Assembly (NCBI RefSeq): GCF_003704095.1
Contig: NW_020847569.1
Span: 806,001-870,000 of the forward strand
Source of the DNA: Pocillopora damicornis
Taxonomy: Eukaryota
Length of the DNA: 64,000 nucleotides
Reading direction: 5' to 3'
Part shown: positions 13,701 through 61,700 of the stretch, in pieces
How the letters are laid out: each line of letters starts with the position of its first letter
How positions within the stretch are numbered: the first letter of the stretch is position 1
The notes under the pieces: generated by a model
Seen by the model: the letters and a program-made list of their open reading frames with translations, nothing else
Database searches by the model: none
What the model was told of the DNA's origin: nothing
Made by a program: the position numbers and the translations under genes

Positions 13701-16700
13701 CTTATGTGTAACTTACTGTCTGAATATTTACTGTCTGCATTTTAACCCAGCACAGTGGCAAGAATTCTTTATCTCTTAATTTCTGGACCAAAAGTTCTGT
13801 ACTCCTTTTCAGGTGCAACATTTTAAGTGATACTTTATAACTACACTATTAAGTTATTTTTCACTTTTTTTTAGCTTTTGAAAGATGAGTTCTGGTCAAT
13901 ACTGAATGCATAGATTCATTTTTTTTTTTTTTAACGTAGTTGAAGATGCAGTTTGCCTAGTTGGTTCACAAACCAATCATTTTTTTTTTCTTGTAATTGG
14001 GTGAATTAAGGATATTGAGAATTCTTTTGGGGCTTTTTCCTCAGGTTACTGAATTGTTTAATCATAGAAGGGCTTTAAGCTGCTTATTAAATATTAATGC
14101 AAAGCTAGAAGCTATCATTTCCGTTCCCCAGTTAAAAGCTTTTACCATAATCTGGCTTAAGGAACAGATGTGTTTTAACTTCTTCATCCTAATGACAATG
14201 ATGTCAAGATGTTTTTATACTTAGACATTTACAAGGGTCAAATTTCTTTCTCTCTCTATTTTTTTTTTAAAGTTTAAGTTGCCTGGTGTAATAGAATGCA
14301 CGTCTTATGGTCTACATTTTTGTTGTAATGACAAATTGCCATATCAATATAATCTGCAATTTTTTAGCTTTTACCAGCCAATTTAGAGTAAGCACAGTTA
14401 AAGCTCTTACCTTGAAAGCACCTCATAAGTGTTTACGATATCTTCCTCCCTGATCCTGTGACTGAATTGGAATGTTAAGTGTTGGCATTATTGTGGTTTT
14501 TAGGGAAGAACAATGTGGTTATTTTTATTTTGAACCAGATGATTGCCTTAGGGCACTTTCTGTGTTTGTTTTCTTGCTTGCTTATACTATTGTTTTGAAG
14601 TCATCCTTTTTATAGAGCCATCTTTTTTTTTTCTCCAGGTGAAAGTGGACTGGGCAAATCAACACTTCTGAACTCACTGTTTTTAACTGATATCTACACA
14701 CCTGCTGCATATCCAAGTGTAGAGGAACGACTCAACAAAACTGTTTCAGTAAGTCTTTTACTTGATGTGCTGTATAAATTTGAAGCCAGAGAAAAATAGC
14801 AAAATATTGAGCACAAAATACTCTCTACTTAGAAGATAAAATATTGGTAATTGGATACTGCAAAGTGGTGTTAAAAATTTTTATTTAATGGCAATTTTAG
14901 TGGGTTCTTTTATATTTGCTCAGATTTTATTTATCTCTGCTTGTGAGCCACATGAGCAAATTGATTGGGAAACATGATTTTGATTTGTTTTCCTCTTGTT
15001 TCTCTCATTTTTTTGATGAATGTACAGTTTAAGCCAAAAAAGAAGGCAAAAATGTCTCGCTCTTTTAGACCCTTTTTGAAGCAGAAACAAAGAATCAGTT
15101 TTCTGCAGTTAAGAAATGAAAGATCAAAGAAACGGGAAGTTTTCCTTGAGTCTCTATTCAGAGAGAAATTTTTTGTTTGTTACTCTTAACCCTTCAACTC
15201 CCAAGAGGGACCAAGACATAATTTTCTCCTTACAATACCAATACTATATCAAGCCGACAAGTGATGAGAAAAGAGGAAATTCTCAATATGGGGATTAGTC
15301 GTGAATCCAATACCAAATTCTCCAAACCATCTTCATAAGAATTGTGTGGCAGACTGTGAGTATAATTTGAATGAGATCTTGAGAGTGCAAGGGTTAAGGA
15401 AAGAATTACTTGAATCAAGTTAAACAGCCTGAAACACAATTAAAGTTAGAGAAAGATGTTTTTCATCTTGTCACAAGTGAGGGACAAGGTAAAAAAAAAA
15501 TTCTGAGTCTCCATGAGGAATTGAACCTCAGACCTTTGGATTTTGTGTTCCGATGCTCTACCACTGAGCCACAGAGACTTTATGATGAGCGAGGTCTATT
15601 ATGAAGTTCATATGACACATGTCAGTAAGCTGGTTTAGTTTTTCAATTAGTAACAGTAACTGTAGAAGGTGGGTCATGGATTTTTTTGTTTCATGTAGAT
15701 AAAACCTTCAACAATTGAGATGAAAGAGGGAGGTGTGCGACTGAGACTAACAGTTGTTGATACTCCAGGATTCGGAGATGCTGTTGACAACACTGACTGG
15801 TAAATTACAATTATAGATATTTCTACACACTTTTTAGCTTCATGGACAGCATATTTTTTATCATTATTATTGAAGGAAAAAAGGAAAAGAAAGGATTCTG
15901 AAGTTTCTAACAAGCTCATAATCTTTCTTTTTTTCTTTTTTTTTTAAGCTGGAAGCCCATTATTGAATACATAGACAACAAATTTGAAGAATATTTAAAT
16001 GCAGAATCAAGAGTGGTCAGATCACCTTTCCCGGATGACAGAGTTCATTGTTGCTTGTACTTTATTGCACCTACAGGGCACTGGTTAGTTCATTTTACAA
16101 ATAGTATGCTTGTTGAACTTTGTTTTGACATTTCTTGATGTGATAGTGACTCAGTGGTGATGAGAATTTGTGGTAAGATTTATTGCTACATGTATTTTCA
16201 TTTTGCAGTCTAAAACCTTTGGATATAGAATTTATGAAAAGACTTCATAACAAGGTGGGCTTGTAACCTTTTGTTGTGCTGATATGCTTCTGCTTTATAC
16301 TTTAATTCATGTAACCTTTAAACTATTACGATTGTTAATTCTCTCCTTTAGCTGCTACACCTTTCCTTGTAATTAGACCTAATTACAATATATTCACCCC
16401 TGATGAAGGCACCAGATAGGAATGTCGAAACGTTGGGTCTATGAATTGTAACTTCTTTGGTTACATTCATTAAATCTGTAAACCAAAGTAGCATCAAACC
16501 ATGTCTAGACCTAATTAGTTCCAAAAATTTGGTATTAGATCAAGATGACAGCTTCTACCTGATAAGTTTGAGTATTCTCATTACCTGTTTGCTTAATCAT
16601 GTATGGGTATTATATGGAGAAGTTACAAGATAATCATTTAACTTTCTACTTATTTTAGGTTAATATTGTACCGGTGATTGCAAAAGCTGACACTTTGACC

Positions 16701-19700
16701 CATGATGAGTGCACCAAGTTCAAAAAACAGGTTTGAAACTTACTTTTTTGCCTCTTTTGTATTACCTTGTATAGAAATTGCATTTTTTTTTAAAGAACTG
16801 CTTCTTTTCACTATCAGATACTTAAGGAAATAGAGGAAAATGACATTGGGATTTACAGATTTCCAGACCTTGGAGGAGATGATGATGATGATGTAGCAGC
16901 TGTTAGTATGAAGGTATCAATAAACTTGTAGAAAATAAAACCTTACATGATGCTGTTCATGTCTATAAAAGTGGAAATACAATACTATGTGATCTGGGAG
17001 ACATATACAGTACTTGCACCTGGATATGCAAGTAACTTGTTTAAGTCCTAACATAGATAACTTTGATTTTGAGCCGGTTATTTACGCGAGTTCTGTCCCA
17101 AACCACCGTTTTATGCAAACAATGGGCCTAAGGCTTTCCCCATAGGAGGGTTGATATAATTAGGTAAAAGTCCTTCCACTGTTGGCTTTCGGCTTTCTTG
17201 ACACTGTGACATAAATAAATGCTCAGATTAAAGGTTCAGCTCAGTTGAGGAGTTTTTTGGACACAGTTTGGTTAAACAACTACTAAACTTTGTTTAAATA
17301 ATCAGACCTTTGTGTTTGTACTCCCTTGTTGAGGAACAATATTATTTTGTTTCTAGGACAGAATACCTTTTGCAGTGGTTGGTAGCAACACAGTCTTAGA
17401 AGTTAATGGCAAGAGAGTAAGAGCCCGAGTGTACCCTTGGGGTGTGGCCGAAGGTATTGCCTGTGATGACATGTTTTTGAAACTTTCTTTGCAAAGTCTC
17501 CAGTTGAACTTTACCGCTCTGACGAAGGGCTAACGCTCGAAACGTCAGCTTTCAAACTCTTTATGGTGGCCAATTTATGATCTCAATTCAGTTGATAATG
17601 CTAAATTACCCTAAATTACCGTCGCAGCACCATAGTTCCTTTAGAAACTTACCCCTTTATTCATTTGAACTTTACAACCCTTTGGTTTCCACTCTGTTGC
17701 CTTTGTAAAGCTATTTTTAACATCTGCTGTCAAAAAGTTAAGCGTTGTACCAGTAAAGTTTGAGACTCTGCCTGCAGTGTGAATGTACTGATGATAGTTT
17801 TAATTACATAATCGTATGTTGAAAGTTCCAACCTGTCTTTGTTGAAACAACTGCATGTTGGAACGTTATCGATAGTCGATGTCGCTGATATGTATATCTT
17901 GCGGGATTATTAATGATTACTTCCTCTTTCTCTCTTTTTTTTTTAAGTTGAAAATGTAGACCACTGCGATTTTGTTGCTTTAAGAAACATGCTGATCAGG
18001 TAAGTATCATGGAACGTAACAAATAAATCCTGATGCCGTAGCAGTGAACGATATCTTAAGCCTGAGTTGTGCAAAACTTAGCAAGCTCAGTTTATTTTAG
18101 CTCACGGTATAAATGTTCGATATAGTGTTATAGCATTGCAGGTAGACCTTCTGATTATCTTTCGTTCTCTTCAGTGTATTTTAATCTGAGATGAAACTCT
18201 GCAATACGTTTATCCCAACAAACGCTTTCAAACAAAAGAAACCAAAGTCGAGATGATTATACTACCTAGATTAGCGCCGATCACCCTTCAAATGAACAGA
18301 TCACAGGGGTTGTATTACAGTTCGAATACTGAAAAATTAGCTTAGAAGCGAACACCAGTAGTTGGCGATTTTCGTGTTTACTTTATTTCGTTGTGCCTTC
18401 ACCTGATGGGGACATTGCAAACTTCTGTAGGCATCACGATCTTATTTACCGGAAAAATTTCAGTGGTTTTGTAAATGAGTTTTATTGCGTGAGTGCGCAT
18501 TAGATAACAACCGATCGCTATGATGATCTCATAACTAACAAGCGTAAATAGAGTGATTGTCTTATCAACAACGTCCGCAAGATGTAAATAAATCTCTTAA
18601 ACTTATTATTTTCTTTTTGAACGAGCCAACTAATTGATTATCTAAGATTTACTTCCGTTTTATTTCCTAAAGCTAAGCCAATCAAATCTACTGAATTGGA
18701 TTATTCAATGATCCAGTTTGTTAATTAATCTTGGATAATTCCATATCCAGGCGTAGATCCATTCTGAGACCATAACCATACGCAGTGACGAAGGGCTCAT
18801 AACGCTCGAAACATCCTTAAAAACTCTTTACGGCGGCCAATTTACGTTATCAACTCATATATAAAACCATGTTATCTTGTAGTACCCACCACCGACTCAG
18901 CGCCTCAGTTTCTTTAGAAACTTTTGCCCTTTATTCACGACCAAATATACTTTCTTTTTCCTTCAGAACGCATATGCAGGATCTCAAGGATGTGACGAAC
19001 GACACTCACTACGAAAATTATCGCTGCGAAAAGCTGGCGGCCATGACCGTTGGCTCACCTACTAATCAGCCAAGTTCTAAGTAAGTAACTCTGTATCACA
19101 TCAGTTAAACAAGAGAAGGATGCATCTCTGCCAGAGAAAGTCAGTGTCATGAATAATTCGGGATTGCTTTTGTTATTCCACCCGGTGATTGGTCTAGAAA
19201 TCTCGCGCGTCATCCTCTGATGCAAAACTGCAACCAATGGGAAATCAGATACAAGCGATCCTCGCAGCTATGAACACCACCAAATGAGTAGTTGAAATAA
19301 GACATGAAGAAAATTCAGGCCCATATGGGATTTGAACCCATGACCTCTGCGATACCGGGGAATGGGGAATCAGTCATTCCCGCGCTAGAGGCTTGCTTCT
19401 GCCTCGTGTTCTCAATGTGGTTGGTTGCTTTGTTCTAAGTGGCCACTGTGATAACTTTCGTTTTGTTTTACCGTGATACTAAATCAAGTAGTACTTTTTG
19501 ACTGGCTTGGGGTTTTGTTCCCATGTCCTAGTGCTGTACAAACAACAAGTTTTCTGGCTAAAAATTAACAGTCTCTGGCTCATGCACTATGAGCTCTAAC
19601 ACTCGAATCGTCAGCTTAAGAAATTCTTAACGGTGGCCAATTTACATTATCAACTCAGTCGACATTAATCAGTATTACCCCCTAATGAGGCAGCACCACA

Positions 19701-58700: not shown

Positions 58701-61700
58701 GTCTGAAACCACTGCTTTTTCTGTATTAGCTTCAGTTACCAACAGACTGGATGGTAATACTGGAGATGAAGATCTGACAGAGTCTTGCAGGCGGTTGTGT
58801 CTCGTATGCGGTTCTGCTGAAAAAGAATTGAGCTTATATGTTCTGAGAAGACCAGAAGATCTAAATGGCTGGATCCATAAGGAGCTGTCCTCAATCCAAT
58901 CTTCATTCCTCATCTCTAATGATCAAAAGGGTAAGATATGTGGAAACATGTCCTTCACGTACCTAGAATAATTTGAAGTAACATTTGTTCTTTGTTTCTT
59001 GGTTTTTGTGGCTTAACTGTTGTTGGAAACATCGCAAAACAGAATCAACGTGTTTTGCCTCTCTTTCATTTTGAGTAGCTTAGGAACCATATTGTGTTCT
59101 TTTTTTTGTGCCGTGCAGAACCAAATTCAGAATATTATTTTTGAAACAGAGGAAATAAACCGAGAAGGATCTAGGATGGTTCACCTGAGTGTTGATGGAC
59201 CCTGAGTGTTGGTCTGGTCTAAGGATTGAACTCTCGGCTTTCCGCACGGTAGTCCTGTGCTCTTAGAACGAGCCAACGTACTAACTTGCTCCACTCGCGT
59301 TTTCTTTTACTTCCAATTAATTAGAATCAGAGTGAATACTAATTTAAGTGGCTTTTGTTGTATCAATTTCATCTTTTTTGTAGTTGGCGGGCCCTTAAAA
59401 TTTCCAGAACTGTCAGAGAGTTTCATTGAAACGGAACAAAACTTGACTGAAGTTCTCTTGCAAGAGCTGCAAAAGGAGTTGCGTAAGTGTCTGAAGGGTC
59501 AGGCCTCGCAAAGCAGAATAGAGCGAAGAATGTGCTGCCTCAAATCTTCTCTATGAGAGCGCCTAAAAGTTAGAGCTTACTCTCACTTTAGCCTTTATAA
59601 AAAGGGTCACGTAGGACTGTGATAAATTGAAGTCCTTTATCTCCGACGGTCTTTTTAGGAAGCTATCATCAAGTAATCCGCTGATAAGATCATCCCTCGA
59701 CCAGTGAGTGGAAGTTTGTGTTTCAGGTTTAAAGTGATCGCAAACTTCCTTGATTTGTAATTTTCGTTATGTCGGTATATATACGTATAATAACATTTAT
59801 TCTTTTTTTTTTGGCAGAAAATTCAGATGATCTGTTTTCGACTCACTCAGGATGTAACATCGTTGATAAAACAACTTCGACTAAGCAGCAGTTCTTAAAG
59901 GAGAAAAGGTAACCGATGTATTAGTGTAGATAACATTATGTTTAAAAGGTGACTGTACGATGCGATACTCTCACCTGCGCAGCTGAGATATTCGAGTCTC
60001 GTCTTGTCTTCCTACACTGGCTACACATGCAGCTGTAATTTTGAAGCTGTCATGCCACATTCCTTCATAAAGGGCTTCGTGTAGTCCTTTTCCAAACAAG
60101 TTGCCTTAAAACTCTAGTTCTGTCTTATCTCTGTTTGACAGTTTTCCTTAACTGGATTCCAATTCGAAATGCTAATTTGAGCCTAAAGTCTATCTAAAGT
60201 ATTTGGATTTGCATCCTTTGCTCCTCAATTTATGTGATACATGATCACTGCAAAGCAAGAAGAAGTAAGCCAGAATTTATTTCGACCAGTTATCTAGTTA
60301 GGTCAACAAGGTTATTATGTTGTGGTATTGCAGACTGGGTTGGAAAGAACATGAACTGGAACCTGTCGATAGAAATGTTTTGCCTCCAGACGTCTCAGGT
60401 GAAAAGTGACTTCATTTGTTTCCGTCGCTCAAAATGTGGTGTTTAGTTCTGACAAGAGAGGATGAAGCTATGAGACTGAACTCCTCGCGTAAGCGTTATT
60501 CGCATGGTTACCCTCACAAGTTATTTTAGACCAATGTTTTTTTTGCGAGTTTCGTGAAGGTTTCTGTCTGTGGAGAATGAACGCAAAGACGCCACATGTG
60601 ATATCCGCGTAAGCGGGATTTATAACAAGGGATTGGGGACTAAAAGGACTAAATTCTTATTGGGTCTCCTAAAAAAGAGGTAATCTGCACTGAATTAAAC
60701 AATATTCCTTGAGGAGTAAGGTCTTTTATGGAGGATTTAGTCTTAGCTTGATCGTTTCTCGGTTATTGCTTGAGCGTGCACTTTCCAAGGGCATAGCTAG
60801 CATTTTTCAAACGACGGGAGGGACCACACTATGTAACACTCAGACTACTCATACCTTACTGTCATGTCAACATCCACCCTGTGTTTCACTAAACCAGCTT
60901 AAAGCTTTGTTTGCTGATTTGTATGAATCTGAATGTTTTGTTTTATTCTTGTCGTGAGAAATTGGCTTGCTCTCAATAGTTGTCATCATATTTTTGTGTC
61001 ACTTTCGTAGAATTATCGTTGTCTCCAAGCAAATGGCCTGAGAGAGCTTGGCTTGTCAAAAATGATCCGAATGCAAGGTAACTTTAATGAAAATTATATC
61101 ATACAATGTGCATCTCACTGGCAACTCATCCTTGCCGTTCTTACCGCTCTTACCGATTATGGACTTTTTTTTTTAATTTAAAGATGTATATGGTGTCTGG
61201 AGCGTATTTCTCTTTCAACAGCTTTTCGCAATAATTTTGATGTACCCTCGTCAAAAGACTTTATCCTATGTTTGTGTCATTGTATAGGGTAAACGATTCC
61301 GTCGCGGACGAGTCAACTAAAAATTATCCGTTGTTAGCATCAGGTAGGTCATTATTGTGGCCTTGTCTCTCTTACCTTTAACTAAAATTGTGTGAGCGCG
61401 ATCACCGTAGAGTCTCTGTGGCTCAGTGGTAGAGAATCGGAGTGCGGAATCCGAAGGTCTGAGGTTCGATTCCTCATGGAGATTGTTTTCTTTGTCCCAC
61501 GCTCGTGAAAAGACGAAAAACATCTTTCTCTATCTATAAGAGCTTTTAAGAATATCAGGGAACAATAATAACTTTAATTTGAACGTAATGCTAAGAAAAG
61601 TTGCAAGATTAATCAAAAATCATTTCAATCGTTAGACTGTTTAAAGCTGCTTTCACCCGATTGCATGAAGAAGTGCGTGCAAACGATATATTTCACTTTT

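What the first reader, a model, noticed from the sequence alone, without database searches (positions are those of the whole stretch)
16374..16517. Hammerhead ribozyme monomer (~132-nt unit) inserted in a MITE in SEPT7 intron 6, in sense orientation
Seen: a complete type I hammerhead layout. It has CUGAUGA, a 4-bp stem II with an 11-nt loop, GAAAC-GUU, and stem I ACCC/GGGU extended through bulges by UUC/GAA and UUACAA/UUGUAA. The unit is bounded by a 12-bp direct repeat TAGACCTAATTA (16374-16385 and 16506-16517) that only partly matches the host MITE sequence (AATTAG). Known: minimal type I hammerheads with a palindromic, nearly absent stem III (here AACGUU) occur in Penelope-like elements and non-LTR retrozymes of cnidarians and other animals, and are proposed to cleave as dimers. 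Inference: this is a retro-copy of slightly more than one turn of a small circular or tandem ribozyme RNA, from a different family than the 17515 element. It is transcribed within septin pre-mRNA and could cleave it.
Basis: partly seen in the sequence, partly recalled or inferred. Interest (0 to 1): 0.8.

Follow-up and report, generated by a model that had tools for sequence, protein, structure and literature searches.

The report
Truncated Penelope retrotransposon end with hammerhead
The hammerhead ribozyme motif is real, but it belongs to a dead 120-base stub of a common Penelope-like retrotransposon that landed in a septin intron, an ordinary case of something described since 2014.

Summary
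The core is ACCC-CUGAUGA-A-GGCA(11 nt)UGUC-GAAA-CG-UU|GGGU at 16396-16438. It lies between two 12-bp direct repeats, inside a MITE, in a spliced septin intron, on the sense strand.

It is not a copy of a ~132-nt circular or tandem ribozyme RNA. Window 16394-16506 is the last 113 nt of a high-copy Penelope-like element (PLE). Longer copies of the same repeat continue upstream into an ORF with reverse transcriptase followed by GIY-YIG endonuclease, with two cysteines between GIY and YIG. The family also shows:
- variable 5' truncation;
- an optional 36-nt tail;
- head-to-head inverted pairs;
- 11-15 bp target-site duplications.

The motif fits the minimal hammerhead of metazoan PLEs (Cervera & de la Peña 2014). 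[quoted passage not shown] At least four families in this genome keep that core while both stems covary. No Rfam hammerhead model detects it.

The window copy is decayed: two of the family's six helix II pairs are lost, and it has no partner copy in tandem. Cleavage of septin pre-mRNA is unsupported.

This scan reached the same conclusion earlier on other pieces of this genome.

The parts
16374..16385 (.). Left copy of the 12-bp target-site duplication TAGACCTAATTA
   Evidence: Exact repeat of 16506-16517. Other members of the family have 11-15 bp duplications.
16386..16393 (+). 8 nt of filler (CAATATAT) at the 5' junction; it belongs neither to the target nor to the family sequence at this position
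   Evidence: other copies read ...GCGTTTAGA before TCACCCC. Its last 7 nt equal the end of the family's tail in several copies, which may be chance.
16394..16506 (+). 5'-truncated 3' end (113 nt) of a Penelope-like element, of the tail-less class that ends ...CATGTCT. The final T is shared with the duplication.
   Evidence: 660 first-look candidates; the 42 scored hits elsewhere were mostly 91-96% identical and nearly all confined to query 21-133; longer copies run upstream into the ORF; 5 differences from the family majority sequence.
16396..16438 (+). Minimal type I hammerhead motif: helix I 16396-99/16435-38, CUGAUGA 16400-06, extra A 16407, helix II 16408-11/16423-26, loop 16412-22, GAAA 16427-30, ACGU palindrome 16430-33, predicted cut after U 16434
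   Evidence: Features match PMC4209133. No Rfam hammerhead hit.
16413..16422 (+). Private substitutions that weaken helix II: 16413 U>C and 16422 G>A break pairs 10.6-11.6 and 10.5-11.5; 16417 C>U lies in the loop
   Evidence: majority sequence of 32 copies; hammerhead fold -6.5 kcal/mol here against -11.8 in a consensus-like copy.
16441..16470 (+). Family-conserved hairpin just 3' of the ribozyme (ATGAATTGTAAC ... GTTACATTCAT)
   Evidence: Read; present in nearly all copies.
16506..16517 (.). Right copy of the 12-bp target-site duplication
16310..16663 (.). Host piggyBac-type MITE (TTAA ends, 18-bp terminal inverted repeats), interrupted by the insertion
   Evidence: paralogous copies run straight from the left flank into the right flank without the insert.
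16255..16658 (+). Septin intron (GT..AG) that contains the MITE and the insertion
   Evidence: joint 16252>16657 (cut +2) in RNA contigs of runs X1 and X2; flanking exons hit Pfam Septin.

Best explanation
A Penelope-like retrotransposon (PLE) of a high-copy family in this coral genome inserted by target-primed reverse transcription into a MITE inside a septin intron.

Inferred steps: reverse transcription began at the family's internal, tail-less start site (...CATGTCT). It stopped after about 113 nt, 8 nt of filler were added, and a 12-bp target-site duplication was left.

The copied stretch is the 3' UTR / pseudo-LTR region, which in this family carries the minimal hammerhead typical of metazoan PLEs. 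In the parent element that motif is thought to act, if at all, as a dimer between tandem copies, with the ACGU palindromes pairing to form helix III. Its proposed role there is to process the element's own transcript.

The window copy is a dead by-product. It has no ORF and no partner copy, and five transitions have accumulated, two of which break helix II. It is transcribed as part of the intron and removed by splicing. It most likely does nothing.
For: Shown:
- The repeat is shared only over 16394-16506.
- Longer copies continue upstream into an ORF whose stop lies about 45 nt before the motif.
- Pieces of that ORF hit RVT_1 (E 7.5e-6) and, downstream of it, GIY-YIG (E 2e-3). The sequence IYSIPCNDCHNEYIGQT places two Cys between GIY and YIG. 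The ESM Atlas puts the RT piece among RVT_1 clusters.
- Of 14 loci fetched through the endonuclease protein search and its follow-up, 12 carry the intact family motif, at a fixed spacing 3' of the protein match where checked; the other 2 still match the 113-nt core.
- Many copies carry a 36-nt tail after CATGTCT and others end at CATGTCT. This matches the two RT start sites reported in PMC11167929 and the 30-40 bp tail in PMC8557442.
- There are 11-15 bp duplications in eight other loci of the 29 examined.
- Head-to-head pairs are common.
- The motif has every feature listed for PLE minimal hammerheads in PMC4209133.
- Four families keep the core while helix I changes (ACCC/GGGU, GCU/AGC, UGACU/AGUCA, CUCC/GGAG), helix II changes, and the 15.2-16.2 pair switches from CG to GC.
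- MITE copies without the insert exist.
- The intron is spliced out in RNA contigs.

Inferred: the order of events in reverse transcription, and the lack of function.
Against: - The Pfam hits for RT and GIY-YIG are below the curated cut-offs, because every copy examined is broken by stops.
- No full-length copy with two direct pseudo-LTRs was recovered. One candidate pair on C37 turned out to be two separate truncated inserts.
- No Rfam hammerhead model matches the window copy or a consensus-like copy.
- Free-energy folding does not recover the hammerhead as the best fold.
- Self-cleavage was not and could not be tested here.
- The pre-insertion site differs from the MITE consensus by about 10 extra bases (ACCTAATTAG). 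The 12-bp duplication therefore requires a private change in this MITE copy before insertion.
Confidence: 0.9

Rival explanations
1. One reading: a retro-copy of slightly more than one turn of a small (~132-nt) circular or tandem ribozyme RNA, that is, a non-LTR retrozyme monomer.
For: The insert is short and flanked by a duplication. The 8-nt filler at the 5' junction ends in AATATAT, like the end of the family's tail, which could be read as a trace of template switching. Animal retrozymes are proposed to derive from PLE pseudo-LTRs (bioRxiv 10.64898/2026.07.22.740005).
Against: Copies elsewhere extend upstream into the PLE ORF, and the window's start is just one truncation point among many. 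No head-to-tail pairs exist at 95-155 nt spacing among 263 anchors. The motif is the minimal type, not the canonical type I with helix III and loop-loop contacts that defines coral retrozymes of 220-240 bp (PMC7229834).
Confidence: 0.04
2. The intronic motif is active and cuts septin pre-mRNA. It would act alone through the accidental helix I extension, or by pairing its ACGU palindrome with that of the second sense-strand motif at 17519-17546.
For: Both motifs have intact catalytic boxes, lie on the sense strand in neighbouring introns of the same gene, and share the ACGU helix III palindrome.
Against: A single minimal motif showed no cleavage, and dimers showed only weak cleavage in vitro (PMC4209133). 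For an anole PLE, no RNA-seq reads began or ended at the cut site (PMC11167929). The window copy has lost 2 of 6 helix II pairs, and the hammerhead fold lies 4.7 kcal/mol above the best fold. Correctly spliced septin mRNA contigs are present in two RNA studies.
Confidence: 0.03
3. A chance resemblance to a hammerhead in AT-rich intron sequence.
For: No Rfam hammerhead hit. Helices I and II are short.
Against: 0 of 100 shuffles match. The genome has 1,894 matches against 24 in the control. The motif is conserved across a repeat family tied to a PLE ORF and covaries between families.
Confidence: 0.01

Closest known systems
Minimal hammerheads (min-HHR) in the pseudo-LTRs of metazoan Penelope-like elements (Cervera & de la Peña 2014, PMC4209133)
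   Same: [quoted passage not shown]
   Different: Nothing of substance. The window copy is a decayed member with a 4-bp helix II. The presence of the motif in both flanking repeats of a full-length element was not seen in the copies sampled.
Canonical C-terminal EN+ PLEs (Penelope/Poseidon, Neptune, Nematis; PMC8557442) and the anole Poseidon element studied in vitro (PMC11167929)
   Same: RT followed by GIY-YIG with two Cys inside the GIY-YIG core; heavy 5' truncation; an optional 30-40 bp tail (36 nt here); inverted head-to-head copies; target-site duplications of variable length.
   Different: The clade within PLEs was not determined. No CX2-5CxxC linker is visible upstream of the endonuclease, which would point to Penelope/Poseidon. 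This is an inference from one translation.
Non-LTR retrozymes of corals and other animals (PMC7229834)
   Same: Type I hammerhead, low GC content, retro-mobilised, probably evolutionarily related to PLE pseudo-LTRs (bioRxiv 10.64898/2026.07.22.740005).
   Different: Retrozymes are tandem 220-240 bp repeats (in Acropora) with canonical, efficiently cleaving hammerheads, and they give circular RNAs. Here there is a single 113-nt fragment, the minimal motif, no tandem arrays, and physical continuity with a coding PLE.
Rfam Hammerhead_1 (RF00163) and the other Rfam hammerhead models
   Same: Catalytic core sequence.
   Different: No match even at E<=10 for the window copy or for a consensus-like copy. 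The models expect a helix III hairpin.

Membership tests
Penelope-like element (canonical, C-terminal EN+) | Single ORF with a reverse transcriptase domain | tested here: met
   L047:3205-4164 hits RVT_1 at E 7.5e-6, 26.2 bits, below the 29.6 cut-off. The ESM Atlas's nearest clusters are RVT_1 / HTH_animal, score 0.97. All copies seen are interrupted by stops.
Penelope-like element (canonical, C-terminal EN+) | GIY-YIG endonuclease C-terminal to the RT | tested here: met
   PF01541 at E 2e-3, below the cut-off, in L031:364-987 and L047:4402-4626, downstream of the RT piece on the same strand.
Penelope-like element (canonical, C-terminal EN+) | CCHH motif with two cysteines directly between GIY and YIG (PMC8557442) | tested here: met
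   Translation reads AIYSIPCNDCHNEYIGQT...KEH...SEH.
Penelope-like element (canonical, C-terminal EN+) | Frequent 5' truncation, optional 30-40 bp tail, inverted adjacent copies, variable target-site duplications | tested here: met
   (truncation points; 36-nt tail in about half of the copies). (head-to-head pairs). (11-15 bp duplications).
Penelope-like element (canonical, C-terminal EN+) | Partial tandem that gives direct pseudo-LTRs on both sides of the ORF | tested here: inconclusive
   No full-length copy was found among the roughly 20 ORF-bearing loci fetched. The direct pair on C37 is two separate truncated inserts.
PLE minimal hammerhead (min-HHR, PMC4209133) | Conserved boxes CUGAUGA and GAAA, with H17 before helix I | tested here: met
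PLE minimal hammerhead (min-HHR, PMC4209133) | [quoted passage not shown] | tested here: met
   A at 16407; G 16408 pairs with C 16426. The same holds in all families seen; the pattern imposed G and C but not the rest of the helix.
PLE minimal hammerhead (min-HHR, PMC4209133) | No helix III loop; palindromic 15.2-16.2 | tested here: met
   ACGU at 16430-16433. One family has AGCU instead, which keeps the palindrome.
PLE minimal hammerhead (min-HHR, PMC4209133) | Helices I and II kept by compensatory changes between families | tested here: met
   Four families have different but complementary helix I (3-5 bp) and helix II (4-6 bp). Helix I was not part of the search pattern.
PLE minimal hammerhead (min-HHR, PMC4209133) | Self-cleavage, as a dimer | not testable with these tools
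   Only assembled contigs were available for the RNA runs, and these cannot show RNA ends.
Rfam Hammerhead_1 / canonical type I hammerhead | Score at or above the family's gathering threshold, with a helix III hairpin | tested here: not met
   No hammerhead family listed at the gathering threshold or at E<=10.
Non-LTR retrozyme | Head-to-tail tandem repeats of the ribozyme-bearing unit | tested here: not met
   0 matches for two family anchors 95-155 nt apart, against 263 single anchors.
Non-LTR retrozyme | Canonical type I hammerhead with helix III and loop 1-loop 2 contacts | tested here: not met
   Minimal motif without helix III. No Rfam hit.
Non-LTR retrozyme | Small circular RNA of unit length | not testable with these tools
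   The contig-only runs cannot show circular junctions for a multi-copy repeat.

The most novel reading that the evidence does not exclude
Two sense-strand minimal hammerheads from different Penelope families (16400-16434 and 17519-17546) sit in neighbouring introns of one septin pre-mRNA and share the ACGU helix III palindrome. They could pair with each other into a mixed dimeric ribozyme that cuts a fraction of the pre-mRNA, giving the host a ribozyme-based brake on septin expression.
Probability: 0.03. Interest if true: 0.6.

Novelty: already known. Interest (0 to 1): 0.12.

Why it matters
It matters little beyond annotation. This hammerhead-looking motif in a gene is transposon debris, not a dedicated host ribozyme, and the apparent ~132-nt unit is an artefact of 5' truncation plus a target-site duplication.

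The family does give a clean in-genome illustration of published PLE hallmarks. Two classes of 3' end lie 36 nt apart, matching the two reverse-transcription start sites found in vitro. Head-to-head copies are common, and the ribozyme stems covary between families.

Minimal hammerheads of this kind were already reported in thousands in a coral genome (PMC7229834) and in PLEs generally (PMC4209133).

Tried and rejected
- Rfam scans of the whole window at gathering threshold, of 16200-16700 at E<=10, and of a consensus-like copy gave no hammerhead family. I treat this as a limit of the models, not as evidence against the motif.
- Free-energy folding of monomer and dimer did not return the hammerhead as the best fold. 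This is uninformative for a motif with a non-canonical core.
- PDB sequence searches with the RT and endonuclease pieces gave nothing useful.
- Four public runs were laid on 15900-17700. All were stored as contigs, so they give no RNA ends, no strand and no test of cleavage. No contig skipped exactly 16386-16505, so no empty allele was seen. The joints near 16372>16526-16554 come from other MITE copies.
- I looked for a full-length element with two direct repeats. The copies fetched (L031-L034, L047, L048) are all broken or truncated, and the C37 direct pair is two independent inserts.
- I considered a 7-bp duplication (TAATTAG) instead of the 12-bp one, because the MITE consensus reads GTAAATTAGTT at the site. 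I rejected it as less parsimonious: it would require the insert itself to carry ACCTAATTA at one end and AGACC at the other, and 12 bp fits the family's 11-15 bp range.
- The large protein searches were not used. The domain order and motifs were enough.
- The septin exons were searched one by one by reference.

Full report
**What is in the sequence.**
- Helix I is ACCC (16396-16399) paired with GGGT (16435-16438).
- CTGATGA is at 16400-16406, followed by an unpaired A at 16407.
- Helix II is GGCA (16408-16411) paired with TGTC (16423-16426), around an 11-nt loop.
- GAAA is at 16427-16430, then CG, U and U 16434. The predicted cut therefore lies between 16434 and 16435.
- The 12-mer TAGACCTAATTA occurs at 16374-16385 and again at 16506-16517.

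A descriptor with only the core and the first helix II pair matches once in the window and in none of 100 shuffles. A relaxed form matches 1,894 times in the 234-Mb genome, against 24 for the same pattern read backwards. The motif is not a chance resemblance.

**What it belongs to.** A search of the window's own genome with 16374-16517 gave 660 first-look candidates. The 42 scored hits elsewhere were mostly 91-96% identical, and nearly all matched only query positions 21-133, that is window 16394-16506. Printed with their flanks, the other copies do not stop where the window copy starts. They continue upstream through ...GCAGCGTTTAGA into several hundred to more than 1,600 nt of shared sequence.

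That upstream sequence is coding.
- One piece reads ...AIYSIPCNDCHNEYIGQTKRQFGTRLKEH... and hits Pfam GIY-YIG.
- Further upstream on the same strand, a 319-aa piece hits RVT_1. It falls among reverse-transcriptase clusters in the ESM Atlas.
- Both Pfam scores are under the curated cut-offs, because every copy I could fetch is broken by stops.
- The order RT then GIY-YIG, with two cysteines between GIY and YIG, is the signature of canonical Penelope-like elements (PMC8557442).
- Of 14 loci fetched through the endonuclease protein search and its follow-up, 12 carry the intact family hammerhead, and where I checked it sits at a fixed spacing 3' of the protein match on the same strand. The other 2 still match the 113-nt core.

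**Structural hallmarks of the family.**
- About half of the copies carry 36 extra nt after ...CATGTCT (GATTGTCC...TTTAATATA). The rest, including the window copy, end at CATGTCT. This is the optional 30-40 bp tail of PLEs (PMC8557442). It matches the two reverse-transcription start sites found in vitro for an anole PLE (PMC11167929).
- The 5' ends are scattered.
- Head-to-head inverted pairs are common. There are four among the first 30 loci and at least ten minus/plus pairs among the first 100 exact anchors.
- Target-site duplications of 11-15 bp flank eight other loci of the 29 examined, so the window's 12 bp is typical.

**The ribozyme motif as a class.** Cervera & de la Peña (PMC4209133) define the minimal hammerhead of metazoan PLEs by these features:
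- the conserved boxes;
- a G10.1-C11.1 pair;
- no helix III loop, with a palindromic 15.2-16.2 pair;
- a short helix I and a longer helix II;
- many covarying families per genome.

All of these hold here. The family majority sequence has a 6-bp helix II, GGCACU/AGUGUC. At least four families in this genome keep the core while the stems change:

| Family example | Helix I | Helix II | 15.2-16.2 |
|---|---|---|---|
| this family (window 16396-16438) | ACCC/GGGU | GGCACU/AGUGUC | CG |
| window 17519-17546 | GCU/AGC | GGGC/GCUC | CG |
| L051 | UGACU/AGUCA | GAC..GUC | CG |
| L058, L071 | CUCC/GGAG | GCCG/CGGC | GC |

Helix I was not part of the search pattern. No Rfam hammerhead model detects the window copy or a consensus-like copy even at E<=10. 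I therefore do not file it under the canonical Rfam type I family. It is a member of the minimal PLE class, which needed its own descriptor in 2014.

**The window copy itself.**
- The insert is 16386-16505/6: 8 nt of filler plus the last 113 nt of the element.
- It differs from the family majority at five positions, all transitions.
- The hammerhead fold evaluates to -6.5 kcal/mol here against -11.8 in a consensus-like copy. In both cases it lies above the unconstrained best fold.
- No second copy lies in tandem. No head-to-tail pairs at 95-155 nt spacing exist anywhere among 263 exact anchors. This removes the circular or tandem-unit reading.

**Context.**
- The flanks belong to a piggyBac-type MITE. 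Its terminal inverted repeats are TTAACCCTTTAACTCCCA and TGGGAGTTAAAGGGTTAA, and the right flank alone has at least 3,165 first-look candidates.
- Paralogous copies run uninterrupted across the insertion point. The local copy carries about 10 extra bases (ACCTAATTAG) relative to the MITE consensus at that point. I take this as a private change that predates the insertion.
- The neighbouring exons hit Pfam Septin when searched one at a time.
- RNA contigs from two independent studies join 16254 to 16659 with GT..AG ends. The insert therefore lies in a normally spliced intron on the sense strand.
- I did not test whether the gene is SEPT7 or which intron this is.
- All runs on offer were stored as contigs, so cleavage could not be tested.
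- Published data weigh against activity. Single minimal motifs do not cleave and dimers cleave poorly in vitro (PMC4209133). For the anole PLE no reads end at the cut site (PMC11167929).

**Comparison and novelty.**
- The closest known thing is the PLE minimal hammerhead.
- Coral genomes are already reported to hold thousands of minimal motifs alongside true retrozymes (PMC7229834).
- Retrozyme membership fails on tandem arrangement and on motif type.
- Earlier follow-ups in this scan reached the same reading for other pieces of this genome. I had formed this reading before opening those notes and tested it independently.

**Verdict.** This is a real motif and a correct observation. It is an ordinary, already known kind of object, and the circular-RNA and pre-mRNA-cleavage inferences are not supported.

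Noticed in passing
window 16300-16316 and 16640-16663: The host MITE's 3' end (...AG|G plus TTAA) coincides exactly with the septin intron's 3' splice site: AG is at 16657-58 and the exon starts GTTAAT at 16659. Just left of the MITE, the sequence reads pyrimidine-rich ...ctttaattcATGTAAcc, which looks like a decayed ...AG|GTTAA. The MITE may have landed in a TTAA at the start of the exon, and its own terminal AG may have taken over as the acceptor. That would have enlarged the intron from about 56 nt to 404 nt without changing the mRNA.
   Followed up: partly
window 17519-17546 (+): A second intact minimal hammerhead (CUGACGA-A-GGGC UAAC GCUC-GAAA-CG-UC, helix I GCU/AGC) lies in the next-but-one septin intron, also on the sense strand. 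Its family is the most frequent one among the first 100 places listed by the genome-wide pattern search. Only these two intact motifs were found in the window, although another note speaks of four inserts.
   Followed up: partly
window 16386-16393: The 8-nt filler CAATATAT at the 5' junction ends in AATATAT. That is identical to the end of the family's 36-nt tail plus one T in several copies (L005, L006, L009, L015, L022, L027). It could be a trace of template switching to a second RNA's 3' end, or it could be chance in AT-rich sequence.
   Followed up: no
window 15506-15578 (-) and 61412-61484 (+): Two tRNA matches at 46.5 and 45.7 bits (Rfam RF00005), about 90% alike. They are either tRNA genes or the heads of a tRNA-derived SINE. 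One lies just upstream of the septin exons examined.
   Followed up: no
L013, L018, L022 (5' junctions at the same base as the window copy): Several other copies are truncated, or folded back into an inverted copy, exactly at or within a few bases of TCACCCC, the 5' edge of the hammerhead. This suggests a preferred stop or switch point for the reverse transcriptase at the ribozyme structure. The sample is too small to test.
   Followed up: no
L012:1-656: About 650 nt upstream of one family copy is an internally repetitive stretch. It aligns to itself at multiple offsets (about 100 and 230 nt) at 75-83% identity, like a minisatellite. It is unrelated to the element.
   Followed up: no
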